Shown in pieces: positions 35,513 to 57,600 of a DNA stretch of 64,000 bases. The DNA is from Podarcis filfolensis. Lineage: Eukaryota. Position numbers and translations under genes: made by a program. The stretch lies in NCBI GenBank assembly GCA_964270895.1, contig OZ185439.1; one strand, written 5' to 3'. The number at the start of each line of letters is the position of its first letter. Position 1 is the stretch's first letter. Under the pieces are notes generated by a model that ran no database searches, was not told the origin of the DNA, and saw only the letters and a list, made by a program, of their open reading frames with translations.

Positions 35513-38500
35513 GTGAGTGACCTGGCCCAGCAGGGCAGCTGATAGGGAAGCACAGCATGCCACATTGCCCTGGAGAGATTGGCATTATGTTTCATGCATG
35601 CACATATTGAGGTCATAGGGCTAGCAACTGTGTAGAGGAAGATCTCAAAAATTCCTTCTACAACAGCAAATACTAATAGGACAACAGCAGTGGGAACGTG
35701 TCCCACAGATATAATGCAGTGCCTGTTGTGCCCCAAATCATATTTCCCACCCACCCATACCTATCCTTCTCCTCCTCTTGGCTACTTGCAGTTCTCCAGT
35801 GCTTCTTATGCATACCACAAAGTCCTCCAGCATTTTTTCTCCTTTCATGGAGTGCAGCAGGTTGGTCTTTGTGTCGAGCATCCTATGTATTGGTCTGCCA
35901 GCACAGCTATTGAGAACAGGTATATTAATCTCCTCTTTCATCACTCAGACAACTGGACAAGAACCACATCAGCTGCATTGAGGAAGGGGCCTTTCGTGCT
36001 CTTCGTGGCCTGGAAGTTTTGTAAGTGTCTCTGGGAGGGCTCTGTAGAAGGTTTGTCCCATCGGGCTGGATGGAGAGCCTGCCTAGAGAAGCATGACTGT
36101 GGTAGAATCCAGCTCAGTTGATGGGAGGGTGGCCTGGAAGCATCCCGGGGCTAGGGCTAACTCTTCACAAGAAACAGTGCCCACCCCTAAATGTGGGCAA
36201 AGAGTCTGTTTTTCTCTATAGCTTTATCACTGGTATATGATCTGCTGGCTCAGGTGGCCATAGCCTTCTCCCCTTCAACACCCCACTTCATTTGTAGGCA
36301 CCAGGCCACACCAGAAGTGTTTTTAACTTAGAGTGTTATATCCTGAGATTCCAACCCATGCTGGTAACATACAGGGTCCAGGTAGCATTCCATCTCCCCA
36401 GAAGGATGGAGGTCTTTTGGTATTACACCGATTCTGTATCAGTTGCAGTGCTTCCCAGCAGAACTGAAAGTGCTATTTTCCACCTTTAGAGCCCTCATTG
36501 GTTTGGGGCTAAGTTATGAGAAGGAGAAGCGGTGCCTGTATGAACCTACCTTTGCTTTAAGGTGGATATCAGAAGCCCTACTTGTTGGCCTGCATTTGAG
36601 ATCATTTAGATTGGTGGGAACCAGGAACCAGGGCCTTCTCAGTGGTGGCCCCTACTTTATGGGATACCCTCCCTAGAGAAGTGTTGATAGGTCACTTTAG
36701 CTTCAGTATTTAATTTGTTTTGAACTGTTTTTAATGTTGAATTTTAAATTGTTTTCAAAGGGTGGGTGATAAATCAATACAACAACAACAATAGTAATAA
36801 TTAGTAATAATCGTCCTACTATATTGCTATGCAATTGTGCAAAGGATTGTAGCTTAAGAGGGTTTTAAATATCGCAGTGGTAAAATCAAAGCAAAACAAA
36901 TAACATTATACCTGGGCTGGTTTCAAAAGTGATCAAGTGACAACCCAAAGCCCAGTAGCTCCCCTTGTGCAAACCGCTGGAACCTGCTTCTGATCTTACT
37001 AATGTCAGCAGGGCCTTCCTCCCAAGCTTGAGGGGAGTGTTGGGTCAGATGACGGTAATATGCATGCAATCCCAGGGAAGCTGACCTATTAGTCAATGTA
37101 AATTTTCTTGCTAAGATGGGTCCTAAAATTCACCTGTTGATCTGTCATTCTATGATCCTCTGTTTTAGGGGTGTGTTAGAACTGGCCCTTGCTTCTCCCA
37201 TGCTGCAAATGATTTTGAAAATAAGATGTGCTGTCAATCTGAGAAGTGTCACATGCCACTCTGTGAGCGTTGTTTGTTTGTGTGTACACTGCACACACAG
37301 CCAGATGAAAGGACAAGATGTTTCTCTCCAGTGTTCACTGATGCTCTTCCTCTTCCTCCTTCCTGCAGGACTTTGAACAACAACAACATCAGCACCATCC
37401 CCATCTCCAGCTTCAACCATATGCCCAAACTGCGCACCTTGTGAGCACATGATGAAGCAGCCCAAGGGCGGAGTGGGATTGGGGGTGGGGTGGAAGACCG
37501 CAGACTGGACATTTCATAAAGCATGGTGGGCTGGGAGCTACCAGTCCATACAAGGAATGCTGGTGGCAACTTTTCACTTTTAGGTCCTGCAGATCTCCCT
37601 TTTTGGCACTGATGTTTTCATAGTAGGTAATGCCTAACCCTGTGCCCAGGATCCCAAGAACCTGGGGCCCTACGAAGATGTGGGATGCTGCCCCCCAATG
37701 GCAGAAAGAGCCACAGCTCTGTTCATGGAGTTGTTGGTTCCTTTAATGACAAGGTGCATCATGGGACAGAAAGCGGTGGCATTAATGTGGTGGGCAGGAT
37801 GCTGGGTGAGAGCAATCCAGTCCATGGAATCCAGAGTAAAAAAAAAGGTAAAGGTAAAGGACCCCTGACAGTTAAGTCCAGTCACAGATGACTCTGGGGT
37901 TGCGGTGCTCATCTTGCTTTACTGGCCGAGGGAGCCGACATTTGTCCGCATACAGTTTTTCTAGGTCATGTGGCCAGCATGACTAAGCCGCTTCTGGCAA
38001 AACCAGAGCAGTGCATGGAAACACCATTTACCTTCCCGCCGGAGCGGTACCTATTTATCTACTTGCACTTTGACGTGCTTTCGAACTGCTAGGTTGGCAG
38101 GAGCTGGGACCGAGCAATGGGATCTCTCCCCGTCACGGGGATTCGAACTGCCGACCTTCCGATTGGCAAGCCCAAGGCTCAGTTGTTTACACCACAGCGC
38201 CACCCGCGTCCCAGAATGCAGAGTACTAAGGCCCAAACCCCACAGTTTCAGATCCCTATTGGACTGGACTCTCCTTCCCAGAAAATGTCCCCACATTTTC
38301 ATTCCAGCTCAGTAAACCTAAGTCTGTTTCTCTAGAAATGGCTTTACCTACAGTATCTATGCAGGTGTCTCAAAAGGTAGCTGTGGAAAGACAGTGATTG
38401 ATATTTCTTTCCCCCCCCCAACCTTTCCTCCCCTGGGTCCCTACAGCCGCTTGCACTCCAACCAGCTCTTCTGCGATTGCCATTTGGGTTGGCTTTCCCA

Positions 38501-41500
38501 GTGGCTGCGCCAGCGTCCCACAATTGGGCTCTTCACACAGTGTGCCGGCCCTGCTGCCCTCCGTGGCCTCAATGTTGCAGAGATTCAGAAGAATGAATTC
38601 AGCTGTTCAGGTCAGTGGCATCTATGGGGTTACAGGGAGCTTTGCAGACCCCCAGAATCACCAGAGAGAGGCCCCTTCTGCGCTCAGATTCAAGGCATAT
38701 CAGCCCTGGAACCAAAGTGAAACCTGCCACAAGAGACCATTGGTCTCTCAAATGCAAGACCCTCTTACTACAACACGTTAGTTTCTCTCATGTGCAGGCC
38801 ATGGTGGTTGCATGACTGCAGCCTGGACTGCAGAAATTGCTTTTTATTCTCCAGAAATTCTTTTAAAAGCATTGTCTCCTTTTATCCTGCATTTTTCTAT
38901 TTCTGACAGTGTGAAGCTATCAAACCATTAGTGCTGGAAGCTGCCATCTTGAAAGATGCCCGCTTGCTCCCTGTGCTCTTTATGTAGTTTTCCTCCTCAG
39001 CGTTGTGAAATGGTGCACCATGCTGCCCTTTCAATCTCATGCTCATTTGTGCACTTGCCCTCCCCTGTCCATTTCTTGTCTCTGCTGATTTGAACTATCA
39101 ACCTGTGTAGCAATTCTGCATATGTATATGCCTGCATATGTATTCATCTCTACGTGTAAACCTTGTGGAGAGGGGCTGAGAGGAGGGTGTGCTAGTGGCC
39201 CAAAGGCTCTCTAGCTGCCCTGAAGAAAGTACACATTCCAAAACCCCAACAGACCACAAGCAAAGAACAGGTAGGCAGGGCTAGGGGTGCCTTGCAGTGC
39301 CGTGGGTTGCAAGCCCTATGCAAAGAGGATGCACTAAGCTTCTGCATTCTTCTCTGCAGGCCAGATGGATGCTACCAGGACCCAAATCTGCAGCTTTTCA
39401 TCAGGTTCCTGTCCCGCCATGTGCACCTGCAGCAATGGCATTGTGGACTGTCGCGGCAAGGGGCTGACAGCCATCCCTGCCAACTTGCCTGAGACCATGA
39501 CTGAGATGTGAGTGGATACTAGGAACATGGTGGGTAGGCAGGGGATGGTGGGACCTGAGCACTAGCACCCTTCCTAATCACATCTACTCTGCTTGGGTGC
39601 TCCTGTCTCCTTTGGCTAGTATTGATTCAGCTGGTATTGGAACAGATAATATATTGTTGCCTAAGGAGCACCTTAGGGCAATTCTCAACTATGACCTTAT
39701 GTCAGGGGTGGGGAACCTCTGGCCCATGGACCAGATTTGGCCTGCCAGGCCATGCCACTCAAGCCATGTAAGGACAGGGCATGTAAGGCCAGGGCATCAC
39801 TGAAAGGAGCTTTCCAAACATCCCAAAATCAGCCAGTTGCCATGTGTCTGGGAAACGAAGCACAAAGCACTTTGAGAGGCGTGTGACCAGCATTTCCCAA
39901 GCACCAAGCATGAGACTAGCAAAGCACTCTGCACAGTGCTTTCCCAAACATCTGATAATCACCTGGTTTGCTGGGCATTTGGGAAGTGCTGTTCAAAGCT
40001 TTGACAGGTGTCGATCACCTGATGTCATTATGTGTCAGGTGACTGGCATATGGGTGGCCCTACTGACTGTTGAAGTTGGCCTACAAGGGTAGGGGGAGAT
40101 AAAGATGTAGTCCACTGGTCCATAAAGCTTCACCACTTCTCCCTTATGCAGAGATGACTCTAGTTTTTGCCAGTCCCTTTTGTGGCTAAAAGCTATACCA
40201 GGACCAGAGATTTCTGCTTCCAGAGAACTGGTGGAGATGTGTCAAAGTGAACTATCCAGGAATACAGCTGTCTGCCTACTCTTGGGGACTACCTCCTGCC
40301 TGATCTCTGTGGCATCCTTGTTGGAAGAGACGACATTTCAGTTGCTCCCATGGTGCAGTCAAGCTGATTTGCTTCCTTGTGTTCTGTTTCCCGTGCAGAC
40401 GCTTAGAACTGAATGGCATCAAGTCTATCCCACCTGGAGCCTTCTCATCATATAAGAAGCTACGAAGGATGTGAGTGTCTTCAGCCAGAGTGAACAGTGC
40501 TGGGCTTGATGGACAAATAGTCTGTGCAGGCCTAAGGCAATACCTTCTGTCCAGACGTGATACAGGCAGAGGGGAAGCAGGTGTTGCATTGCAAGGCGTA
40601 CTCGAGGGAGCACAGAGCTGTATTGGCTGACGTGCACCTCCAACTCAGTCCTGCTAAGGAACAGGAGTGAAGCCTTCATTATACTCTGTAAAGAACACAA
40701 GGTGGGAGAGGCACCTTCAGAAAAGGAAGGAGCTGTGACTACATGCGTAGGAGCGTTAACTTTGTCTTTGCCTTTCAGAGACCTGAGCAACAACCAGATC
40801 TTGGAGATTGCGCCTGATGCCTTCCAAGGCCTGCGCTCACTCAACTCTCTGTGAGTAGCCTCAGTGGGAGCAAGCATGGCAGACATTAGTCTAGGTGGGG
40901 AAGTGGAATGCCACTTGCATGCAGCATGAGAATATTCTCTACCACTCTACCACTGGCTATGCGATGTGGCTTCCTGAACATGCCAGTTCCAACTCACAGC
41001 CCCCTTGGCCAACATATTGCTTGGCCTTTCTAATTCCCATTTGCTGCTGATAATGTTAGCATGTGAGTTCCACCCACCCACCACACTCCCCCACCACCCA
41101 CTGCACCAGCAAGTTAATGTGGCTCCATTCCAAAGAGCAATCTGTGTCATGGTTGTCTCTTGAAATGCAATTTTGCAGGCACAGCTCCAGATGGTGGGTG
41201 TTTGCATGAAGCAGCTCTCCATGGACCTATGGCGATTTCAACCACACCATTTCCACCCTTCTCTTTTGAAGGTTTACAATGGAACAAATGAAACTGCTGC
41301 AACCTTGCGGGGAGCCACTTGACCATAGCTGTCAACTTTTCCCTTTTCTTGCGAGGAATCCTATTAGGAATAAGGGAATTTCCCTTTAAAAAAGGGTAAC
41401 GTTGACAGCTATGCACTTGACACAGGCAGCTTGCCATGTGGAGCTGCGCCTATCTGGCTGTTTCAAGTGGCTGCATATGGCCATTTGCATATACGAACCG

Positions 41501-44500
41501 GGCCTCAGTGGGGACTTAAATCACATTTGAATCCAGATTCCCTGATGCTGGCATCATATGCCAGCTGGCACCTCACAGTCTCATTATCGTTACGTCCGCT
41601 ATGTATGAAGGGTGAGCCTGGGTTCAGTTGTTCAAGATGGCCTCTTTCCTCAAGATACATCAGGACTTAACCACCAAGAGACGCTACTAATTCAAGCACT
41701 GGTTTTGTTTCTTTTCCAGAGTCTTGTACGGGAACAAGATCACAGAGCTGCCCAAAGGGGTATTCGGGGGCTTGTATGCACTGCAACTACTGTAAGCACA
41801 AGTGAGAGGGATAGCTAGAGGGCCATTTGGACATCACTATAGCAGGGGGCAAGTGGCAGTGTGGAAACCTTGATCCAGATGGCAAAGGGGCTCCAGACCT
41901 CACATCTGGCTCCCATACAATTTCAGCATACTTCTGTACAAACCTGACAGCCCTTTATCTCTTCCCTGGAACCTGCAACTCTCCTTAACAAGCCTTTTCT
42001 TCTTCCCTGCCTTCATCTTCCACACAGCCTGCTTCACTGTCCCCTGTGTCTTTTTACTCCACAATCCCATCTAGAGTTACTGTCTTCTCCCCAGCTTTAA
42101 TCTTTGCTTCCCTCCTCATCTGCCTATATTCCTCATCTATACCAGGTGTCAGCAACCTGCGACCCGTGGGCCACAAGTGGCCCACGAGTGACCCACAAGT
42201 GGTCATTTAAATGGCCCATGAGCCGCCTGCTCGGTGAGTCCCTGTGCGCTGCACTAAACTGGAGCAGTGCGGAGTGGGGACTTGCTTCTGCGTCACCGGA
42301 AATCGCGTCTGCACAGATGCAGACACCGAAAATTGCATCTGTGCAGGCGCGATCCGGCCCATGGAGTGATCTCTGCGGGAGTGAACCGTCCCAGGCGAGG
42401 TAAATCTTGCCGATCCCTGATCTATACTATCCCTTCCTTCTGTCCACCTCAGATTCAGGGAAGGGTTGTGGATATCCTGTCTCCTCACCTGTCTTCTTTG
42501 TGGCCATTTTGTTCTCTGACCTACTATCACTTGGTCTAGGCTGTGTGAGTAACATGCTGGGTGTTAGTTGAGTGGGTGGGATCTGCAGAATCCCTTGCTG
42601 TGAGCAGTGGCCAAGAATATTTTGTGTGTGTGTGATAGCCACTACCACTACGACCACCACAATGTGCACACGCACACACTCTGATATGGTGTTTTGTGCT
42701 CCTTCACTCCAGGCTCCTGAATGCCAACAAGATCAACTGCATCCGGGCAGATGCCTTTGCTGACCTGCAGAACCTGTCGCTGCTCTCGCTGTACGACAAC
42801 AAGATCCAGACCTTGGCCAAGGGCACCTTTGCCACCTTGCGAGCCATTCAGACTCTGTGAGTGCTGGCTTCTCTGAAGATATGTCCAATGAGAACAGGGT
42901 TCTGTGGGAGGAAGGGAGGAAATGCCCTTGGAACACGGGGGTCCCACTGAGAAGGCAGGTAAGATTCTGTGGCCAAGGCAGGAGATTACCACAGGGGCAG
43001 AGCTCTAGAAAGAGAGCAGAAAGCATTGCAAGGTCATGCCTTTGCAACCATCTTCAAGACCAGCCTTCCCTAACTGGGTGTCTTCCCATAACTTGGCTGG
43101 AGCTGATGGAAGGATGGAAGTTGTTCCAACAATATCTGAAGGGCAGCAAGTTGGGGAAGACTGCCCTAGAGTGTAGAGGCTGGCCCAGGGCCATTGGCAG
43201 AGCCCAACATCCTGGCACCAAAGCTGAGGTCACAAGGAAATGGACCACTTTGCCTTTGGGGTGCCTACAAGAGCATTCAGCATTATGCCAGCTAGAAGCA
43301 GCATCTTGGTTGCTAGATTTAAGGTTGCTCTGACAGCAGCCACCAGAACAACTTTGAAATTCAAGCTGCTCTTGTTTCTTTCCTTCTACAGCCATCTGGC
43401 CCAGAACCCCTTTATTTGCGACTGCAACCTGAAGTGGCTGGCAGACTTCTTGCGTGCCAATCCTATTGAAACAAGTGGTGCTCGCTGTGCCAGCCCCCGC
43501 CGCCTCGCCAACAAGCGCATCGGACAGATCAAGAGCAAGAAATTCCGCTGCTCCCGTACGAATGATCTTCTTCTGTAGGGCTGCGTATAGATTTGGGACA
43601 GAGCAGATATTGGATGTTTCCCTAGCACTTCATTGCATACTTATCCAGGGATCCTGACATTAGCACCTCAGTGAAATCTAGGGGAAGATATTGTAGAAAC
43701 ATCCCCCCCCAACTGAAAAACTGCAGTGTTTCTGTTCTCTTATTTTAAAAATTAACTCTTACATCTTGTGCACACTTTGATGGCTGGTGGTGCATTTGTC
43801 GATTTTTCATCAGAAATACATATTAAGTTAATATGCATGATGTCATTTCTAAGCATATGTATCTGGATAGAAATATGGATTCTGTTTTCATTCACACTGC
43901 AGTATATATACTTGTTCATACATGTCTGAGGAAGTTATGAGCAGCATAGCCTTTAAGATCTTAAGTTTGCTTCATTCAGATTAACACTCTGCATATTTCT
44001 GTTCACAGCCAAAGAACAGTATTTCATTCCAGGTAAGGGAGCCAGTATGGAGATGCTAGAATTTGCACGTGAGTTGCATGTGTATGTTTGTGGTATGTTT
44101 GCACTACTGGCAGAATGAGGTTGCAGCTTTGCAGGATTGCTGTTATGATGTATTTTTAACGGCTTGCATTAGATCCAGCAGTGGTGGCATGGACTGTTTG
44201 CAGGCACTGTGTCCTTCCAGAGGCTCAGAACAAGATCAACCAGTCTCTGTCTTTCATATCTGCCTTCTCCGTTTGCTGTAGCACAGGAGTGGGGAACTTA
44301 ATAGGCCACACGTGGTCCACAGCCAATTTCAATCTGTCACGCCTCCACTGCTTCTGGCTACTTGATGGTGGTGCCACTTATTGGAGCCTTACTCTATGTG
44401 CAGAAATTTCTGGCTTAATTATGCTGGCCAGAGGATTTATATATTTTTATTTATGAGTTCTGCATTCAACTGGGATCCCTGATAAAGCAGAGCTCCCAGA

Positions 44501-45557
44501 TGCCTGGTGGCTTCTAGAGTTCTACTCACATTCAAGCAGCCATGGTAGAAGCTCCCTTCAACAGGAGAAGGTCTGGGACTGGGTGAGCAGGAATGTTGGG
44601 AGCAGAGTCAGCATGTGAGGCCTCATGCCCTCAGACAGAAGGAATCCCCTTCCACAATATGCTTATGCAACAGTCCCAAGCATTCACACACACCTCTGTG
44701 TGCACACTGTCTCATTGCTTTCTCTTGGTGGCAGGTACGGAAGATTACCAGTTGAACAGTGAATGTCACAGTGACGTAGTCTGCCCCCCCAAGTGCCGCT
44801 GCGAAGCCAACGTGGTCGAGTGTTCCAACCTGAAGCTGACAAAGATCCCAGAGCGCCTCCCTCAAGCCACAGCTGAACTGTAAGTCAGCATGCTTTGGCC
44901 ATATCTAAGAACCATACTTCCTTCCTCACTATCAAAAACCAAGTACTCTTATTTGCTTTCCATGTGGCTTTATTTATACAGTTGTAGATAGCAAATGTTG
45001 CTATTGTAGGGTTGCTGTTGTTTTAAGGACTGATCTCTGTGGCAGGGACACGGAGGCATTCTCTATGGTTTTGGGGTTTGCCCTCCCCCATCATGCATTG
45101 AGATGGAAGGACCTGCTTGCTGATTGGCTCCCCCTGCTGAGGCACACCTGACCTCCCAGACGGGGTCTGCCTGCCATCTGTGAAGCAGGATTTCATTTTA
45201 ACTCTATAGAGCCAAACAAACATAAGAAGAGCCCTGTTGGATCAGGCCAAATGTCCATTTAGTCCAGCATTCGGTTCTCACAGTGGCCTATGGGAAGCTT
45301 GCAAGCAGGATCTGACACAACAGTGCTCTTCCCACTTGTAATTCCCAGTGACTGGTATTTGGAAGAATGCTGCCTCTGACAGTGGAGGTAAAGGTTAAAA
45401 GGTTCCCTACATACTTGCTGCGAACTATGAATCTATGAAACTCACAGTTCTTTTTCTTAAGGTGATAATAGAAGTGAGGGGGAAACTCCTTGTTGTCTAA
45501 AGGTTTTTTCTCCTGATACATAATTCATACTTTGAATTACTGCAGTATGTCCAATTC

Positions 45558-45608
<51 letters not shown>

Positions 45609-48600
45609 TTTTCCCCACCCACCTGACTGGGTTGCCTCAGCCACTCATCTAAGATTCCTAACTTCTGTACCCAGTGTTCATCTTACACACTGACAAAGCT
45701 TAGAACTTCTATTTCTTGTGCGTTTTTCACTCCAGTGCCTCTCCCTTCTGTAGTGCACTGCACTGCACCCAGCATCCCATATTGTGTACTAAACGGGTAT
45801 CTGAAGCCTTTTATATAAAGCATTTATTCTCCATGCAAGCACAGTGGAATGGCCCTTGGCCCTATCCAGTACTGAGTCTTTCATTGGGCCATTTCACCTT
45901 CTATTTCTATTCTATATTAAATTCTCTGAAATATCTGTGTGTAGGAAAAGGGCACCTTGTTCATGAGGACAAGTGGCTTTCTGCTGCAGATGCTTGATTT
46001 AGAAAGCTGGTGTACATTGGCTTTCAAAGCCATATACTTACTCCTGGCAGAACAATCCATTTGCATTACGCTTTATATTCTGATATATATGCACATTTTT
46101 ATACACAGGGACTAACTCAGTACAGAGTGGAAAGAATGTGTTAAGCAATGCAAAGTTAGTTTTCAGAGATGGGCCTAGAATACACATATGTTTTATTTTA
46201 TTCACTGCTTTGCTTTCCGAGCTGTATGCTTACAACCCTTTATTTCTGTTGCAGGCGGCTGAACAACAATGAGATCACAGTGCTGGAGGCCACAGGCATC
46301 TTTAAGAAGCTCCCACACTTAAAGAAAATGTGAGTATGTGGGTTAGGGGTTCTCATAGCAGAGGAGATACTCCAAAGACCTCTTGTGCACACAAGATCTG
46401 GGGAAAAGGAGGCGGCAATATGAATAGGACTTAGAGTGCAGCAGTATTCCAACAGGAGCCAAATATTTCTAATGCAAGAGGCTGACATGTATGCCTAGAA
46501 TGTAAAGGCCAGACTAGAGATGACCTTTGTCACATTGCTTGGTGTTGCATAGTTGATTTTTAAAAGTTGAACAGCTGGCATAGGGGGGCCAGCCAGATCA
46601 GGAAAATGGTGTGGAGTGAGGGGAGCTTTGACCCAGTGCTGGAATTGTCCCCTCCTCAACTGCTGTTTACAAGGAGAATAAAGCTTCCATTGACATCAGT
46701 GGGAGCTTTCCTTTCAGTGCAAAGAGCAGGCACAGGAGGGAGAAGATTCTGATCAAGACTGCCAGGGGCTACTCAATGGGCCTTCAGAAGCACAAACAAT
46801 TTTTTTAGAGGAAGTCAAAAGTTTAAGACTAAACATACGGCATACATTCAAAGTGGGTGCAGCAGGGGCAGCTCGCAGAAGAATTAAAGATAGCAAAATA
46901 AAACCAGCGCTGTTGGAACTACTACAAATATTGTTCATTTGTCTCTGTTGGAGAGAAATGCTCCTTGTAGGCTGCGCACTGAGTTGAGAAAACTTTCTGC
47001 CTGCTCCTGTGTTCTACTATCACTTCATGTTCCTTGCTTTCCCAGAAACCTGAGCAACAACAAAGTGTCAGAGATTGAGGATGGAGCCTTTGAAGGGGCA
47101 GCTTCAGTCAGTGAGTTACACCTGACAGTTAACCAGCTGGAGTCAGTGCGCAGCGCCATGTTCCGGGGCCTCGATGGGCTGCGGACCCTGTAAGTTGGCC
47201 TAACTGGGGTTGTTGGCCTAACTGGGGTAGGGAAGATAGGAGAGAGCGGCAGCGGTGGGTTGTCAGTATGCAGGAGGAGTAGCAGGGTGGAGAATGCTGT
47301 CAGGCTCCTTTGGCTTTGGTAGTTTGTAGAACGGGCTTCTTCCCATTCTCTGTCTTCCTTCCAGGATGCTGAGGAACAACCGCATCAACTGCATCCACAA
47401 CGACAGCTTCACGGGACTGCGCAATGTGCGCCTCCTCTCGCTGTACGACAATCAGATCAGCACCATCGCACCTGGGGCTTTTGACACGTTGCAGTCGCTC
47501 TCCACGCTGTGAGTTGCGAGGCGGGGAAATTCTAACCTATTAACTAACCTCTGAACATGCTCAGTCCTCCATCCCTTGGTGAGAGCTGTCTGCAAGGTGT
47601 AGGCCACTCTGCTACCCCACCTTGATTGTAGGGAGGCTCCATAGCTCAGGAGTAGAACCCACGCTTTCTATACAGCAGGTCCCTGCTTTAATCCTTGGCC
47701 TCTCAAAAGCGCTCCTATGTAGCAGTATTGGGGAAAATCTGTCCCTAAGACCTTGGAGGGCTGCTACCAGTATTGTAGACAAAACTGAGCTAAGCAGACC
47801 AGAGGGTTTGGCTTAGAATAAATCAGCTTCCTGCAAACGTGGACTGTCTGGCCTATGTTATAGGTCTTGAAAGGGAGAAGGTGATTGAGCCCTACCTGCC
47901 TACAAGCCTTTGCTAGATTATCCTGTGTTTGCCCAGTTTATTTATCTCCCTCCTGTACCCCTCCCACCCAGGAACCTGCTGGCTAACCCCTTCAACTGCA
48001 ATTGCCGCCTGGCCTGGTTGGGCGACTGGCTTCGGAGGAGGAAGATTGTGACTGGGAACCCCCGCTGCAATAATCCGGACTTCCTACGCCAAATCCCACT
48101 GCAGGATGTGGCCTTCCCCGACTTCAGGTGTGAGGAAGGTAACTCACAGGCTCTTGGTGGGGATGAGGAGGATGGGGAGGGAGCAATTAAGCAAACTGAG
48201 GCTATGATTGTATAGCAGGTGTATCTTCCCACAGACCCACATAAGGCCCTATTTGAGTTTCCACTAGCAGACCAGTTGGGAAGGCTGTTGTGGTTGAACG
48301 AGGTTGATACTCCCATTAAGCCATAAATGTCCAACCCTTTTCCCTGTCCAGAGTTGTTGCAATATGAATTTAAACCAACAGAGGGCACAAAGGAAGTCAT
48401 TATGGAAAATGGGAGTGCCATGTATGAAGCCAGATTTTGAAAACGCTGAATGTCCATTAGCCCAGGCTGCACAGTGTGTGTAAACTGCCTCAGCCCTCAA
48501 ATCTTGCAGTAGCAGTTCACACATGGAAATGAGTTTCCTCACGCAGATCAGCTGAAGTGGGAGGAACCCAAAGGCTGCTGTAAAGGGCAAAGAAGGCTGC

Positions 48601-48652
48601 AGCCACTAATGAAATGATGTGGTCGCCCCATTCTGAAAAGTTGTGGGAGATT

Positions 48653-48695
<43 letters not shown>

Positions 48696-51600
48696 CATGC
48701 ATGTATGTCTTGCAATCTTCTTCTTCTCGTACTGTCTCCTCAGTTGGGAAGGCCTTTTTTGTTGTCCCAGCATGGGCACTGGTTAAGCTCAGCAGCAATT
48801 ACATGGACATGCCTAGCAGTTTTTGTATTGCCTGGTGGCTTCAAACTAGACATAAACTGAAACAAAGCACAAATCTTGTCAGGGATGCATCAGGCCCCCA
48901 CTTACGTAAGGGGCTGTGCCGCCGTGGTTAGGAGTGGTCTCAAGGTCCCCCCCCCAAATCAATTAATTGGTTAAAAGCAAGGCAATTTAATCAGCTATTT
49001 AACCACTCAGTATAAATAAATACAGTATCTTAATGCAGGAAATATTTTTGGAGATGTTTAACACAGCACCACTTTACTAAATAGGTAAATCATTAACTGT
49101 CTAGCAAATCATCTTAAGCTGTTGGCCCTGGTCCAAACAGCAGCTTCTGATATGGTGCATCTATGCAGGGTGTGGAGGGGTGGCTGCTGTTCGGGGGGGG
49201 GGGGGAATTAACAGCTCAATAGCTTTTCCCATGTGCTTCTGAGAATTGAAACCCTTGTGTAAATCAATAGGAGGACATAGATGTCAAAGGGACCTTTCAC
49301 ACTCTTTCCAATTAAGAGTGGCGTTTTATTTGCAATGAATTAATCACACTAGTTGATTAATATTCTCAGTTCTAATTGCTGCTGATGCCTTTGGCCCTTT
49401 GATAAAGTGGGACACTTTATAATGGTGATATAAGGGCAGACTGAAATCTAGATTTCCCTGGAGAAACATAGGATAATGTCTGCTTTCAAGATCTCCTATT
49501 CCATCACCATGCCGTCTCTTTCCACTGTGAACCCTTTGGCTTGTGCCTTGGCAGGTCAGGAGGAGACAAGCTGCTTCCCACGCCCTCAGTGTCCCCAGGA
49601 GTGCACTTGCCTAGACACTGTTGTTCGCTGCAGCAACAAGCACCTGAAATCCCTCCCCAAAGGGATCCCCAAGAACGTCACAGAGCTGTGAGTAATGCTG
49701 CCTGGGCCCTTCTGTTAATGCTGCATCTGGGAAGAAGGGGCAATGTGGGCACTGGCAAGTCGCACCCATGGATGAAGAGGCTGGGAACAGCCTAGTGAGG
49801 GGCATGCAGCTTTATACCTTGCACTGTTCTGCAGATCATCCTCAAAAGCTAAACACTGATCCAGTGCATGCCACATTCTCTGTGGGTTCAAAACTGGATG
49901 CCACTGAACTCTGAAGGGATTTTTTATTTAGGGGAATGAGTTCTGTGGCAGGTGGAAGGGGCCTGTAGTACTGTTATATTACTCTGCAGCGTTAATGAAT
50001 CCAGAATCAAACATCTGGAAAACTGGAAGAAAGCAAGGCAGCCTGAGACAAACATAGTTTCAGATTTAGGAGAGCATGTATGCCACCCTGTTGGAAATAC
50101 AGGCGTGAAACACAGGCATTTGCACTTACAAGATAACTCTGATGGTTCTCCCTTAGCTGGCACCATTAACAGAGGAGCAGTGACAGTGCTTATCACTAGT
50201 TATAGCTTCTAGGTTTAGAGTCCTTTGAACACCATTGTTGGAAGTTTAACAGTCCTCTCCTGAATTGCTGCTGTGACCTCTGATGCATCCATCATTGTCC
50301 TTGCAGCTACTTGGATGGCAACCAATTCACCCTGGTTCCTGGACAGCTCTCCACCTTCCGTTACCTACAGCTGGTGTAAGTATCTGAGAAGAAGTGGCCT
50401 CGTATGGGTCCCCGAGAGCTTGCCATAGTCTTTTTTCAGAGAGGCAGGAGATGGGCTGTGGGCTGTGGCCTTTTCTCAGACATTTGTGCAGCATGTCTGT
50501 GGAAATTTTTAGACCAGGCCTAGGTAGGGAGTGGTGCAACTCATACCTCAGTGGACGCTGATCAGCTGATTTGGCTCACATGGTATCAGCCTTTGACCAG
50601 TACAGAGGGGCTGGTTGGAGGTACAGGAGATCTTTGTGGAATCAGGTGACCATTCTGTTTTCAGAATAAAGAGAATAAAGCAGATGCAGAAAGGCCGAGT
50701 GGCACCCAGATGTTGTATCTCCCACCTGGTTCTTCCATCAAAATGCAAAAAAAAAAAAAGCCTTTTCGTTAAAACACACACATACCATAGAGCTATATGG
50801 AAGCAGAGAAGCTTCTGAAAAACAACAACAAGAGGGTGGTCAAAGAGGCTAGCATGAAGGATAAGAAATAATTTTTGCCTAAGGGAGAATTTGAGGGGAG
50901 GCATAGGACCCATTCTGAATTACATAAAATTATGCTTAACATATTAGCTTGTACAGCTGAAGAGGAGGTGAGAGGTTTAAGGCAAGAAAATTAACTATTA
51001 AATGTTTTTAGATTTTAGCTGCCCTGGTTATGGGGTCAGATTCCCAAAAGAGGCTAAAATGCAAATGCTGTGCAACTAAAAAAGCTGGATTCTCTTGAGC
51101 AAGGTGCAGTTAACTCAGCTCAGGATATTGGGTGAAGTAAATAATTCTAAAAACGCCAACTAGTCCATCAGACTTGGGATTTGGAGTTCATCCATCTCTC
51201 TATTTACTTTGGTTTCCCTGGACATTAGAATAGCTTTGCTTTTCTGCTAAGGCACTGTGAGTCCTTTAGGAACTGATTTCAGTTCCCAAAGAGGTAGATT
51301 ACCCTTCTGGCATCTGTCTCATATGTGGTTCCTGGAATTTTCTGCATGATATAGCCCTTTCCCCTACCCCATTGACCCCACCTCACTGACTTTTCATCTC
51401 AACTGTTTGTTTATTGCCTGCCTAAGGAATTCCAAAGGACCCTTCCCAGTTTATTTTATGTGCTGGCTGTTGAAATGCAGCTGAGTCTAAGTCTTAAGCA
51501 CACTGACTCCAAGATTCACTCCATGCTCTGCAGGTCATCTTGTGGCTTTTCCTGGCCTTCAGAGCATGTGCACTGTTAGATTTCCTTCTTCCTACATGAT

Positions 51601-54600
51601 ACAGTTTATCAAGACTCCTTTCTAGCAGCACCAGACAGAGAAGAGTTTAGAAGAATTAGCTGACATCATGCAGTCATCAGCCCAGAGCTGTTGCCAAAGG
51701 AGAAGGCAGATTTGAAGGTGCCACCAGGGCTGCATCTGCTGGATGTTCAGTCTGTGGAGCCACTGTTCACATGAGAGTTTCCTTAGATATGCAAAAGACT
51801 GTAGAGTTTGAATGCAGAAATCTGGGAAGGACAGATTCGTTCTATCCCTATTTTCTCCAATGGAAATAGGGACATCCCATTCCATAATGATTATTTTACT
51901 ATTTTTACCCCACACATCTTATTGGGTTGCCCCAGCACTCTGGGCAGCTTCCAACATACATAAAATCATAATAAAACATTAATTTTTTTTTTTAAACTTC
52001 CCTGTACAGGATTGCCTTCCAGTGGCTTGGGGGTTGGATAACGCCATATACCCTCCAACATTTCTCCAGTGAAAATAGGGATATCCTAAGGAAAAGCAGG
52101 ATTCTGAGATCAAATCAGAAACCAGGACGGCTTCTCTAAATCAGGGACTTCCCTGGAAAGTAGGGACACTTGGAGGGTCTGTTCTATAGGAAGAGAGAGT
52201 TAAATGTGGTGTGAGCTTGCACAGTGCTTTTGTCTTACAGGGATCTGAGCAACAACAAGATCAGCTCTCTCAGCAACTCATCCTTCACCAATATGAGCCA
52301 GCTCACCACTCTGTGAGTGCCCAATACAGCATTTGACCAGCAGATCAGAAAGGGAGGATGTCCTACTGCCTCCAGCAAAAAGAGGCCTCCTCTACAGGGA
52401 GAGAAATGCCTTTTTAAATGACTGATGTTACAGTATACTGGCTTATACTGTGCAAAGCAGGGTAGAAATGCCATTGATCCCTGGGGTCTACTGCCTGGCC
52501 AAAGAGAACATCAATTGATGGGGTGTCGGTTTCTGGTTCCAACTAACTAAACAGGAATGCATGCCTCCTGCAGTTCATTCTTGTCTACAAGGTGTTCTGT
52601 GACAACAACTACTTATAATCAGGAATTTGCTTAAATCCATGTGACCCATACACATGTACTCGTCTGTTCCCATTCTGATATTAGCTTATAAATCCTAAAG
52701 CTGCTACATCATCATAAACGTTAGGTTAGGAGGTTTCTTTCTGTTCTATTGACTGTGGTGTTCAGTTTCTGAGTTCCAAGCTTAAGGGTCAACCAGAAGG
52801 GCTGGAAACTTATTTTCATTTAAAAGACAAATGTAGGACTGAACGCCTCAGTCAATAAATACAATTAAATTGTTTTCTGGCAGCCAGAGCCTTGAAATTA
52901 CAGGATTTTAGTGGGATTTCAGTCATCCCAATTGAAAGGGGGCTGGTGACACATATTGTTGATTGATAATATATTTAAAATCATCTTAGCAGTACATAGA
53001 ATGTCACTGCTATTTAACTGAAAGACACCTAGCCATTAAAAAAAAAAAGTTGAACTGAATAGTTGAACTGAGTTGAATAGAAGTAATGTAGAAAGTAAAA
53101 ATCCTTCATTGGCCAGCAGACCCTATTATTTTCTGTGTTGCCATCAAAGTTGCAATTTTAGACTCGTGCCAACTATTTGACGAATCTGGAGAGAGTATGA
53201 ACTTCATGGGTTGTTAGCATCGTCATTGAGTGGAATCCAACCATACCCCAAGAACACACTGTGCCCCAGTTTATGTGAGTTGCCCGTTAGAGAATCTTGA
53301 AAGAAACAATGGCTTGGCTCCTAAGGTGTGCTAACTTAGGGAACTTCACAGAAGGAAATTTTCCTGTCCCCCCCCCCACTGTGCCCTGCAAAAAGCCTGT
53401 CGTAGGATTGGTGGGTGTACCTCCTGAACAATGGGGGTTTGGGCACAGTGGTTTGCTGGGGGCAGAAAGGCCAGGAGGGTTTCCTTCTGTGAATTTTCAT
53501 AGCTTACCTTAGGATCTGAGTCCAATTTTAGGGAGACCCCTCACCCCACCTGCAGGAGAAGCGTTTTTGATGGGCACAGGGAGCAGGAGGGATGAAACTT
53601 TCCTTCCTTTAACTAATATGGGGCTGGGGGAGGGATATCAGACAGTATGTGGGCTGGGTTTTTTTTTAAGGAATGTGTGATGATTCAAACTCTTCCTTCT
53701 CTTCCCCATCCCTCAGGATCCTCAGCTACAATGCCCTGCAGTGTATCCCTCCCCTGGCCTTTGAGGGTCTCCGTTCACTACGGCTGCTGTAGGTACCTTG
53801 TATTCATGTATTCCCCTATGCCCCTGTTCAAGGAGAATCCCCTCACTGGAGTCTGACTTTGGCCTAACTGTTCCTTAAACTGTTACTTTAAGAAGTGAGC
53901 AGCCAGGCAATTGGTAGTGGAGGGAGAATAATGGGCTGAGGGACCCTCCACTTGCTTAGTTTGTGTGTGTTATGTGTCATATGGACATTCATTTTGCTTT
54001 CCTTGTTTCCTTGGACAGTTAAGACTCAGCCACACATCATCTGGGCATAGAGCAGGCAGTCTATCATAAGTCTGCGGGTTCGTAATCCAGTGCTTGACAT
54101 ATGATGCAGATGATATAGGGGGGAGGAGTCTAAAAACCCCAATTCCTGACTTCCCTGGTTTTAGGCAGATCATGCTCCCCTAACCTTCTTAAAGGGTCCA
54201 TCACAACAAGTAAGACAGGTGGGTCCCACGGTCCAGGACACTGAGAATGCTACTTGTGTTTTGTGCCCAGGTCCCTCCATGGAAATGATATTGCTACACT
54301 TCCTGAGGGGATATTTGCTGATGTCATCTCCCTATCTCACCTGTGAGTATTTGCATCAGTTTGAACACCCATTCTTTCCTCTTGCATGAGAATCCCAGCT
54401 TGGCACTACTACCTGATGCTCTGTGGGACAGTACTTGGAAGGCAAAAGCTAGAAAGCACCCTTTGTTTCCCGTTGTTTATCCACCAGGTCAGAGAATGAT
54501 GCTAGGCTGGGGTAAAGCCTATTTTCATTTTGGTGTGATGGCTGCCTTGGCTGACATGATGGCAGACGTTGTGTGCTCTGTATGCTGAACAGCAGCAGGA

Positions 54601-57600
54601 ACTGGTCTGGTTCTGCTTTCTTGCAATGTTGCTGAAGTTCCTCCTGGCACCTTTTATCAGGAGGCAGCAACCAAGCTTGCAGTCCTGTAGTTTGCACCTC
54701 TTAAGTAAGGCAAAGGAGTTAGCATGCGTGCGCGCACACACACACACACCAGGCTGTACTGGTTCTTAATGTCCAGTTGTCTGTTGGTGGGGTGGGGGAA
54801 GTAAGTTGGGGAGGAAGTTGTGTTGTGCCTCTTGTCTTCTACTACACTTCAGAATAATGCAGGAGAAACCAGTGTAGACCAGCACCCCAATGCTCAGAAC
54901 TATAAAACACTGCAACAGACTCTACCTGGGTTAGAGTCTAAGGAGAAGGATGGGGAAAGGTACATTTGGGGGAAGACTGGGGTATGTTTTTTGTTTAGGG
55001 TTTTTTCCCCCAGCAGGACCCTCAGCCTGCAGAGCAATTTCAGCCTTCAGAGTAAATTGTTTCTCAATTTACATACATCTGAAAAGATTTTAGCTATGCT
55101 AATAAGCAGCACCTCCAGGAAAGGCGGCAACCCTAGGGACTACCTCTATGTGTCTTCATCACTCAGCACCCGCACCCTGAAGTGATGAGTGGTGCCAACA
55201 CCCTGCATTTCGGTGGCCGCAATTTGCACATTTAGCTGCATCTTATTGAGTGATGTCGTCAGGAACTGAGATAGCAAGTTGCAAGCCAGCATGTGTGAAT
55301 CATACCTTTAAGAACATTATGAAGAAAGAGAGAGACCACCTCAGATTGCAGCTATGTTGCTCTATGAGGGCAGTTTCAGAGTCTGAAAATAGAAACCTTA
55401 CTTATTAATCAGTTCCAGGGCCACTAGAGGCAGCCAGAGAGATCAAATGCAATGAATGACAGCCCCCCCTCCAGACCTTAAGGAGTTATGTAGAGATTCT
55501 GGTTCTCCCTGCTTCACAGAGCCATCGGTGCCAACCCACTGCACTGTGATTGCCACATGCGCTGGCTCTCAGGCTGGGTCAAAACTGGCTATAAGGAGCC
55601 TGGCATTGCCCGCTGTGCTGGCCCTGCGGATATGGAGGGTAAACTGCTGCTCACCACTCCTGCCAAGAAGTTTGAGTGCCTAGGTAAGTGCATAAATACT
55701 TTATAGGATACTTTATTCATTTTGCAGAGCAGCTTTGTCCAAACAATGGCTCTTTCTGGTCCACCCTACCCTGCCCAGTTGCTCTTTGGCCCTCTTCCCT
55801 TTCCCAACCAAACTGGGACCGAGGTTGAGGCACCTTAGCTCCAAGGCAGGTCAGGTGAACAGTTTGGGTAACTCCAAGTACTATAGGGCTTGGGCCTGTT
55901 GGTTGAGCATGAGGCACATAGTGAGGGAGCATGAGGGTTGTTAATGTGCGAGGAGGGGGGAGATGAAAGGAAGGGCTTTATGCTAGTGATTGGAACTGTG
56001 GTGAGGCTTGTGCAACTTCTGTGTTGCACCACATTGCCCACACATGTGCTACTCCTATCATGTTTGGTCCATAGTGTTGAGAAGGTAAGATGAGTGTCTT
56101 GGTGAAGGAAGACCTGGAGGAAGGACACAGGCTGGAGGCTATGTTGCCTCCTCCTTCCATAGCCTTCTCATCCAGCTAAGTCACTAGAGACAAATCCATC
56201 CTAGCTGACGTGGTAAGAGTGTCTATATAGGAGCACTCCAACTGTTTGCATCTTCCAGCCTGTTCCTGGCCTCTCCATATGGCAAACTCCATTGGGCTGT
56301 TTGTTCATCGTCCAAAGGTCTTTCCCATCAGTTGCCACCCAGCCCCCCTTTTTAAAAACTGGAGGAGCCAGGGATTGAACCTAGGAAATTCTGCATGCAA
56401 CGCATGTGTCCCAGCACTGAGCTACAGGGCCTACTATTTAAAGAAGAAAAACAAGTAAGCACAACCTGGCTTTGTGCCACAGAGTGGGGTGGGCAGGCTC
56501 TCCTTTCAGAACTCCTCCAGCTGTTAATATATATTCAGCTCCACCATTAATCCGTTTGCGATCTCCTCTATGTTTCTGGCAAGTGCCTTGCAAAAGATTC
56601 TGGCCAAGAAGGGGGGCAGTCTTCACAGGAGGATGTGTGGAAATCCTCCCTCCCGTTCAGTGATTCTTTGGCTCTGACCCCAATTCCTAGTTGTCTGGTT
56701 TCTTTCATCTATGCAGGGCCTCCTCCCCTCATCATCCAGGCCAAGTGTAACCCCTGCCTCTGCAGTCCCTGTCAAAATAGGGGCACATGTCAACAAGACC
56801 CTTTGGACTCCTACCGCTGTATCTGCCCCAGTGGTTACAAGGTGAGAAGAGGGATGGGGAGGAGGAGAGGGGTGACTAGGGAGGGAGAAGAGATCATTGA
56901 CAAAGGGAAGGATTGGGCTTTCTCCCTGCTTTGGGGACCATAGCCTCTGACAGCTTGTGTCAACCAAAAGAAAAAGGCTCAGAGAAGGACCAAGACATGG
57001 TGGAAGGAAGCCATTCTCCAGTTTGACAACCAGCCTAGTTTATCACTGCCATCAGGAATGGGCGAGATACACTCTCAGTCCCTACTGATTGTACCTAGAG
57101 CTGCCACTATTTCTGGGGGTGGGAGTGGGGAATGTGGAACTGGCTGTTTCATCTGAACGTTCGCCAGATGTTTTGCACTAGCGTGCCCATTGTCCCTGAT
57201 CATGATGGAAACTGAACTTCAAAACTTACAGAGGACGCTTGGTTGGGAAGGCAGCTCTTGACTAATAAAGGAAATCCTGGTGGCGAAAACAAGCAAACCC
57301 AAAAAGGACAGCCTGCATTATGTATAGGCAGCAATTCCTATTATTATTATTATTTTGTTCTTTTATGGCTGATGAGCAAGGACCTGAGACTGAGAAACCT
57401 CACGTCCTGGCCAGAGCTTTATAATTTGTTCCTTGTATTGTGGCTGCTACTTCTCCTTGTCTTATTCCAGGGCCAAAACTGTGAACTCTCTGTGGATGGT
57501 TGCTCCAGCAGGCCCTGTGAGAATGGTGGGACCTGCCTGTCTCACGAAGGCAGTGAAGCCAGCTTCACGTGAGTGGCTGCTCAGGTTCTCAAATGGGGGG

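What the first reader, a model, noticed from the sequence alone, without database searches (positions are those of the whole stretch)
43549..44080. 24-nt SLIT1 microexon with neural-splicing motifs, next to a weak C|GTACGA donor that recodes both splice outcomes
Seen: exon 14 ends TCC C|gtacga, a poor U1 match with C at -1 and -2. The 24-nt exon at 44009-44032 has TGC about 17 nt upstream of its acceptor, and TGCATG at 44075-44080 (about 43 nt downstream) and at 43834-43839. Known: TGC near the 3' splice site is the SRRM4/nSR100 microexon signature; downstream TGCATG is an RBFOX activator; the equivalent AKEQYFIP exon 15 of SLIT2 is alternatively spliced. Consequence of the -1 C: inclusion gives [11 protein letters not shown], where I recall [11 protein letters not shown] in mammalian SLIT1. 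Skipping gives CS-R-TEDY, where a G-ending exon would give CSGTEDY. Inference: the linker after the Robo-binding D2 domain has a regulated isoform pair with lineage-specific junction residues.
Basis: partly seen in the sequence, partly recalled or inferred. Interest (0 to 1): 0.7.

Follow-up and report, generated by a model that had tools for sequence, protein, structure and literature searches.

The report
SLIT1 linker microexon with weak donor
This is a lizard's copy of a well-known 24-letter optional exon in the axon-guidance gene SLIT1; its one oddity is a C at the preceding splice site where about 250 other vertebrate SLIT sequences have G, and I could not check that base against raw reads.

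Summary
Every sequence fact in the finding is correct. The D2 LRRCT exon ends TCC C|gtacga at 43555. A 24-nt phase-1/phase-1 exon (KEQYFIP) lies at 44009-44032, and the D3 LRRNT exon starts at 44735.

The gene is SLIT1 and looks intact. The microexon is the orthologue of the published SLIT2 exon 15 (AKEQYFIP).

The C at -1 is unusual. None of 252 informative vertebrate SLIT junctions has Pro or Arg there, and all 8 distinct orthologous DNA loci have G|GT. It is the weakest of 22 donors mapped in the window. No in-frame alternative donor exists, so it is probably used, giving Pro (inclusion) or Arg (skipping).

The "neural splicing motifs" are at chance level. TGC and both TGCATG copies are missing in the related lizard, and GCATG is missing in four other species. 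The published SRRM4-dependent SLIT2 microexon is a different exon, and mouse SLIT2 exon 15 is not brain-enriched.

Verdict: a known exon carrying one unverified single-base curiosity. Interest is low to moderate.

The parts
43392..43555 (+). SLIT1 exon encoding the C-terminal cap (LRRCT) of LRR domain D2; ends TGC TCC C (phase 1)
   Evidence: Translation. Pfam LRRCT. It matches the end of the solved SLIT2 D2 structure 2v9s/2v9t, E=2e-30. Acceptor ttccttctacag| read.
43553..43561 (+). Donor site CCC|GTACGA, with C at -1 (43555). It is the weakest donor of the gene within the window.
   Evidence: Approximate PWM score -2.9 bits, against -0.5 to 7.6 for the 21 other donors. U1 duplex -0.9 kcal/mol, against -4.3 to -12.0. 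Orthologous loci all read G|GTRRN or G|GTAAT.
43556..44008 (+). Intron between the D2 LRRCT exon and the microexon (453 nt). In-frame read-through stops at TAG 43576-43578.
   Evidence: ORF 43240..43578 ends ...[11 protein letters not shown]. The other nearby GTs (43575, 43584) are out of frame.
43834..43839 (+). TGCATG, 170 nt upstream of the microexon; chance-level and not conserved
43990..43992 (+). TGC upstream of the microexon acceptor; reads TGT in the related lizard
44009..44032 (+). 24-nt cassette microexon, phase 1 to phase 1, encoding (x)KEQYFIP(G). It is the D2-D3 linker insert, with strong donor CAG|GTAAGG.
   Evidence: It is 21/24 nt identical to the related lizard L008, and all 3 differences are synonymous.
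44075..44080 (+). TGCATG, 43 nt downstream of the microexon; not conserved
44735..44879 (+). SLIT1 exon encoding the linker end and the LRRNT of domain D3 ([23 protein letters not shown]...); donor ACT|GTAAGT
   Evidence: Pfam LRRNT. SLIT1-type sequence in 28 hits. Against L008: 123/145 nt identical, with 19 synonymous and 1 non-synonymous codon differences.

Best explanation
The stretch is the D2-D3 linker region of a lizard SLIT1 gene. It holds the exon for the D2 C-terminal cap, then the conserved 24-nt frame-preserving cassette exon (KEQYFIP), then the exon for the D3 N-terminal cap.

The microexon is the orthologue of the SLIT2 exon 15 that is published as alternatively spliced. In this assembly the donor of the upstream exon carries C instead of the otherwise invariant G at -1, and also has poor +4 and +6 positions.

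Shown: the sequence; the uniqueness of the C; the weakness of the site; the lack of any in-frame alternative donor; the coding constraint on the neighbouring exons.

Inferred: the C is a real substitution, in this individual or its lineage. The ordinary U2-type spliceosome still uses C|GTACGA, helped by exon definition (a good upstream acceptor and strong sites downstream). The protein therefore carries Pro (microexon in) or Arg (microexon out) in place of Ala or Gly, just after the last Cys-Ser of D2, in a flexible linker where the change is probably tolerated.

The TGC and TGCATG motifs are chance occurrences, not a conserved SRRM4/RBFOX code. Whether SLIT1 skips this exon in this species is unknown.
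For: - Sequence and translations.
- SLIT1 identity and an intact exon series.
- 0 of 252 informative junctions with P or R. They read G or A, apart from two fragments (P0003, P0130) whose DNA still shows G at -1 and one invertebrate-like protein (P0123).
- 8 distinct orthologous DNA loci all have G at -1.
- The donor is the weakest of 22.
- Read-through stop codon and no in-frame GT.
- Purifying selection against the related lizard L008: 19 synonymous to 1 non-synonymous codon differences in the D3 exon, and 3 synonymous to 0 in the microexon.
- An equally poor U1 match (ACT|GTACGT, -1.2 kcal/mol) sits at the next SLIT1 donor in L008, so GTACG-type weak donors seem to be tolerated in lizards.
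- Motifs are not conserved or enriched.
- SLIT2 isoform pairs with A/G junctions are annotated across fish, snake, bird, shark and lamprey.
Against:
- No other squamate exon of this kind could be retrieved, so 'lineage-specific' cannot be told from 'private to this individual'.
- CCGG to CCCG is a plausible homopolymer-boundary assembly error.
- A donor this weak could equally be non-functional.
- The donor scores use an approximate PWM recalled from published human compilations plus a U1 duplex energy, not MaxEntScan.
Confidence: 0.6

Rival explanations
1. Assembly or consensus error. The true sequence is TCC G|GTACGA, the canonical G at -1, and the C comes from a mis-set boundary between adjacent CC and GG runs. 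The protein would then be the ordinary [11 protein letters not shown] / CSGTEDY.
For: G at -1 is invariant in every other sequence seen. CCGG to CCCG keeps the length, an error mode known for long-read consensus (general knowledge). With G the donor would still be modest but usable, -4.3 kcal/mol.
Against: Per-base substitution error in modern assemblies is far rarer than real lineage substitutions, even at constrained sites (prior reasoning, not tested). Nothing else in the 22 mapped exons looks damaged.
Confidence: 0.12
2. The C is real but is a private or polymorphic hypomorphic or null allele of the sequenced animal. The donor is largely unusable, transcripts skip the 164-nt exon or retain the intron, and they are degraded. 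The other haplotype carries G.
For: Extreme weakness of the site. Invariance of G elsewhere. Slit1 loss alone is mild in mice (general knowledge).
Against: No sign of decay elsewhere in the gene, though a recent allele would show none. The prior for a deleterious heterozygous variant at one given base is low.
Confidence: 0.15
3. The microexon is a neural, SRRM4- and RBFOX-activated switch exon, and the weak upstream donor is part of the regulated design.
For: The exon is 24 nt. UGC lies 19 nt upstream and UGCAUG 43 nt downstream. UGC enrichment upstream of nSR100 microexons is published (PMC4387716). SLIT2 exon 15 is alternative (PMC6406468).
Against: Motifs are absent in the related lizard and in four other species, and are not enriched. 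The nSR100-dependent SLIT2 microexon is in EGF5, not this exon (PMC4387716). Mouse SLIT2 exon 15 is included more in lung than in brain (PMC6406468). The weak donor is shared by both outcomes, so by itself it cannot bias the choice.
Confidence: 0.12

Closest known systems
SLIT2 exon 15 (AKEQYFIP) cassette: Slit2-WT versus Slit2-deltaE15 (Lin et al. 2011, cited in PMC12607519; PMC6406468)
   Same: Paralogous exon with the same 24 nt length and the same phase. It encodes the same KEQYFIP peptide at the same place, at the end of D2 and before D3. Both isoforms are annotated widely in vertebrate SLIT2 models.
   Different: This is SLIT1, for which I found only inclusion-type spliced fragments (P0051, P0129) and no skipping evidence. 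The junction codon starts with C, not G, so it gives Pro/Arg instead of Ala/Gly.
nSR100/SRRM4-dependent SLIT2 microexon (PMC4387716)
   Same: A microexon in a SLIT gene. A UGC near the 3' splice site is the published hallmark, and one UGC is present here.
   Different: That exon adds nine residues to the fifth EGF domain, so it is a different exon. The UGC here is not conserved in the related lizard. No SRRM4 dependence is known or tested for the linker exon.
Robo1/Robo2 microexon 6b, NOVA-regulated (Johnson et al. 2019, cited in PMC12308364)
   Same: A frame-preserving microexon in the same signalling pathway that tunes repulsion strength.
   Different: It is in the receptor, not the ligand, and has a different regulator. 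There is no sequence relationship.
Weak U2-type 5' splice sites lacking G at -1
   Same: Fifteen other donors in this window lack G at -1 (14 have T, one has C). These are mostly LRR exons ending CT|GTRAGT.
   Different: Most of the others compensate with a GTRAGT-type intron side (GTRAGY; one reads GTAGGT). This one has C at +4 and A at +6 as well.

Membership tests
SLIT1 orthologue | Ordered exons for LRR domains D1-D4, EGF repeats and the laminin-G domain on one strand | tested here: met
   tblastn with a full-length SLIT2 model maps about 25 exons in order from 35.4 to 63.9 kb on the + strand. Pfam LRRCT and LRRNT.
SLIT1 orthologue | SLIT1-type rather than SLIT2/3-type sequence after the linker ([31 protein letters not shown]) | tested here: met
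   The exon-specific search returned 28 proteins, all of this sequence type. SLIT2 models read TEDYRSKLSGDCF and SLIT3 reads SEDYRNRF. Assigning this sequence type to SLIT1 rests partly on my memory of human SLIT1.
SLIT D2-D3 linker microexon (SLIT2 exon 15 type) | 24 nt, phase 1 to phase 1, encodes KEQYFIP, lies between the D2 LRRCT exon and the D3 LRRNT exon | tested here: met
SLIT D2-D3 linker microexon (SLIT2 exon 15 type) | Both inclusion and skipping isoforms are produced | not testable with these tools
Both isoforms are annotated for SLIT2. For SLIT1 I saw only inclusion fragments.
SRRM4/nSR100-dependent neural microexon | UGC motif just upstream of the 3' splice site, conserved | tested here: not met
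   Present in the window at -19. It reads TGT in the related lizard L008, is absent within 40 nt in L005/L006, and is present in L001/L002.
SRRM4/nSR100-dependent neural microexon | Neural-specific inclusion that depends on SRRM4 | not testable with these tools
   No RNA data. The literature points elsewhere: the nSR100-dependent SLIT2 microexon is in EGF5 (PMC4387716), and SLIT2 exon 15 is not brain-enriched in mouse (PMC6406468).
RBFOX-activated exon | Conserved (U)GCAUG within about 300 nt downstream | tested here: not met
   Present in the window at +43. There is none within 300 nt in L001, L002 or L005/L006 (only 34 nt of downstream sequence was available in L005), and the aligned site in L008 differs. 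There is no enrichment in the window.
U12-type (minor) intron | 5' splice site RTATCCTT | tested here: not met
   The intron starts GTACGAAT.

The most novel reading that the evidence does not exclude
The G-to-C change at -1 is fixed in this lizard lineage, and the near-zero U1 match is nevertheless spliced efficiently. SLIT1 then carries a lineage-specific Pro (long linker) or Arg (short linker) right after the Robo-binding D2 module. The slow upstream donor alters how often the linker microexon is included compared with other vertebrates.
Probability: 0.2. Interest if true: 0.45.

Novelty: new member of a known kind. Interest (0 to 1): 0.27.

Why it matters
If the C is real and used, it is a natural example of an ultra-conserved donor G being lost while the exon stays in service. 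The two linker isoforms of an axon-guidance ligand would then be recoded (Ala to Pro, Gly to Arg) next to the Robo-binding domain. That would be a small, testable case for work on splice-site robustness and on the role of the SLIT D2-D3 linker.

If it is an assembly error or a private allele, there is nothing new here beyond the known SLIT linker microexon.

Tried and rejected
I did not pass run ids seen elsewhere.

2. A 3-nt deletion model. P0006 reads ...CSGRTNA and the window reads ...CSRTND, which suggested a deletion. The DNA of L005/L006 aligns base for base (TCC GGTAGGAC against TCC CGTACGAA), so a plain substitution explains it and the model was rejected.

3. Apparent exceptions with D after FRCS (P0003, P0130). 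Their DNA still has G at -1. One contig continues G|ATTGG, probably a chimeric or otherwise spliced contig, and the other is a gene-model artefact over G|GTAAGC. P0123, with M, is an invertebrate-type Slit.

4. Getting full-length squamate SLIT1 models. The representative search returned no full-length SLIT1. The SLIT3-seeded word search listed only SLIT2 models among the best 120 of 774.

5. Close relatives. The exon-16-seeded search found one related lizard contig (L008), but it starts 315 nt before the microexon and lacks the donor in question.

6. A metagenome scan for any SLIT exon end with C at -1 gave 0 hits. The window's own read-through ORF is not on record.

7. Alternative donors. 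GT at 43575 and at 43584 are out of frame and lie beyond or at a stop codon. It is not a U12 site.

8. Rfam on 42.5-45.5 kb, both strands, found nothing.

9. MaxEntScan is not installed. I used an approximate PWM (frequencies from memory) and U1 duplex energies instead.

Junction residues were read from the split codons.

I did not fetch DNA for the mammal-like fragment group.

Full report
**What is there**

- An exon runs from 43392, after the acceptor ttccttctacag, to 43555. It ends TGC TCC C and is followed by GTACGA.
- It translates to [54 protein letters not shown]. This is a Pfam LRRCT.
- It matches the C-terminal 54 residues of the solved SLIT2 D2 structure 2v9s/2v9t at E=2e-30, and the match stops at ...KKFRCS.
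- A 24-nt exon lies at 44009-44032 (cacag|CCAAAG...TTCCAG|gtaagg) and encodes KEQYFIP.
- The next exon, 44735-44879, encodes [48 protein letters not shown], a Pfam LRRNT.
- All three junctions are phase 1. The split codons read C|CC (Pro) with the microexon and C|GT (Arg) without it.
- I derived these residues by eye.

**Which gene**

A tblastn with a full-length SLIT2 model maps about 25 ordered exons (LRR, LRRCT/LRRNT, EGF, laminin-G) on the + strand from 35.4 kb to the end of the window. The ORF list shows matching open frames.

The exon after the linker is of the type I recall for SLIT1. A search seeded with it returned 28 proteins, all [10 protein letters not shown]...-like. SLIT2 models read TEDYRSKLSGDCF and SLIT3 reads SEDYRNRF. 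Earlier notes of this scan call the genome a lizard.

**How unusual is the C at -1**

I ran three searches:
- a word search seeded with the cap exon;
- the representative search;
- a full-length search seeded with a SLIT3 protein.

Together they gave 254 SLIT junctions, 252 of them informative. Most short hits are genomic ORFs that read through the donor. In those, the residue after FRC[ST] reports the -1 base: G|GT reads as Gly.

Among SLIT1-like exons (at least 50/54 identical), there are 61 Gly, 5 Ala (spliced AKEQYFIP), 2 Asp and 2 truncated. Among the other SLITs there are 137 Gly, 46 Ala and 1 Met. No sequence has Pro or Arg.

The two Asp cases still have G at -1 in their DNA. The Met case is an invertebrate-type Slit.

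At the DNA level, L001, L002/L003 (the same sequence from two runs), L004, L005, L006, L007, L009 and L010 all carry G at -1, followed in all but the anomalous L007 by GTGAG, GTAGC, GTAGG, GTAAT or GTAAG. L005/L006 align base for base with the window across the junction. A plain G-to-C substitution therefore suffices, and a 3-nt deletion idea I briefly held was dropped.

**How weak is the donor**

I located 22 donors of this gene in the window. Fifteen of the others also lack G at -1. Fourteen have T, mostly LRR exons ending CT|GTRAGT, and one has C (CAC|GTGAGT).

Most of these compensate on the intron side. The site at 43556 does not: it reads CCC|GTACGA.
- Its approximate PWM score is -2.9 bits, against -0.5 to 7.6 for the rest.
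- Its U1 duplex energy is -0.9 kcal/mol, against -4.3 to -12.0 for the rest.
- Orthologous sites in other species give -7.8 to -10.5 kcal/mol.

The PWM uses frequencies recalled from published human compilations. MaxEntScan was not available.

**Is another donor available**

No. Read-through hits TAG at 43576-43578. The next GTs (43575, 43584) are out of frame. The exon's last codons contain no GT. The intron start is not U12-like.

**Is the gene alive**

The closest relative I could reach is L008, a Logan contig from another lizard.
- Its D3 exon is 123/145 nt identical to the window, with 19 synonymous and 1 non-synonymous codon differences.
- Its microexon is 21/24 nt identical, with all differences synonymous.

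This is clear coding constraint, and it covers the microexon too.

L008's own next donor is ACT|GTACGT, a U1 match as poor as the one in question (-1.2 kcal/mol). GTACG-type weak donors therefore appear to be tolerated in lizard SLIT1. L008 begins only 315 nt upstream of the microexon, so it lacks the exon whose donor is at issue.

**The "neural" motifs**

- TGCATG occurs 77 times in the window against 68.7 +/- 8.5 in shuffles. Two copies within about 250 nt of a given exon is only mildly unusual, and the pair was noticed after the fact.
- A TGC within about 30 nt is expected by chance in roughly a third of sequences.
- In the alignment with L008 the TGC reads TGT, and neither TGCATG is kept.
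- L001, L002 and L005/L006 have no GCATG within the flanking sequence available, up to 300 nt on either side of the microexon.
- L005/L006 have no TGC within 40 nt upstream.

The literature also points away from this reading.
- Mouse SLIT2 exon 15 is included more in lung, and equally with skipping in brain (PMC6406468).

The SRRM4/RBFOX reading is therefore not supported. RNA data could still overturn this.

**What is known**

SLIT2 exon 15 encodes AKEQYFIP at the end of D2. Slit2-WT and Slit2-deltaE15 differ in their effects on lung cancer cells (PMC12607519, PMC6406468). Full-length SLIT2 models from fish, a snake, a bird, a shark and a lamprey show both forms, always with Ala or Gly at the junction. 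For SLIT1 I saw only inclusion-type spliced fragments (P0051, P0129), which is too few to judge.

**What could not be done**

Base 43555 and all junctions therefore remain unverified.
- The window's read-through ORF is not in the protein collection.
- A metagenome scan for any SLIT cap exon followed by C-GT found nothing.
- Rfam found nothing on either strand.

**Judgement**

The microexon is an ordinary orthologue of a known exon. The one unusual item is the single C.

On priors, a real substitution is more likely than an assembly error, since per-base assembly error is very rare. No in-frame alternative donor exists and the gene is under constraint, so the site is probably used, giving Pro or Arg in a flexible linker just outside the crystallised D2 module.

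Two rivals remain open. One is a CCGG-to-CCCG consensus slip. The other is a private hypomorphic allele of the sequenced animal. Each could be settled by a single read pile-up.

Noticed in passing
window 43556-43566 and 44735-44745: The intron after the cap exon starts GTACGAATGAT and the exon used on skipping starts GTACGGAAGAT: the first 5 letters are identical and 9 of 11 match. RNA reads with short overhangs cannot tell unspliced RNA from the skipped isoform. The C at -1 also creates the palindrome CGTACG.
   Followed up: partly
L008 947-955: In the related lizard contig the donor of the D3 LRRNT exon is ACT|GTACGT (U1 duplex -1.2 kcal/mol), where the window has ACT|GTAAGT. It is a second very weak GTACG-type donor in lizard SLIT1.
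   Followed up: partly
window 35513-53789 (donor table): Most 72-nt and 144-nt LRR exons end in phase 2 with CT|GTRAGT, so T at -1 is the rule in this gene and is offset by a near-consensus intron side.
   Followed up: yes
P0127 (Logan fragment, 299 aa): In one GC-rich, probably avian genome, an ORF reads straight through from the cap exon into AKEQYFIP. The intron before the microexon is only about 100 nt there and is open in frame.
   Followed up: no
P0212 (Acipenser sinensis, flagged UNVERIFIED_CONTAM): This gene model contains the ...KKFRCS cap-exon end three times in tandem. It is a probable assembly or annotation duplication.
   Followed up: no
window 56600-61700 (EGF exons): The published nSR100-dependent SLIT2 microexon lies in EGF5 (PMC4387716). 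I did not look for a SLIT1 counterpart among the EGF introns of this window.
   Followed up: no
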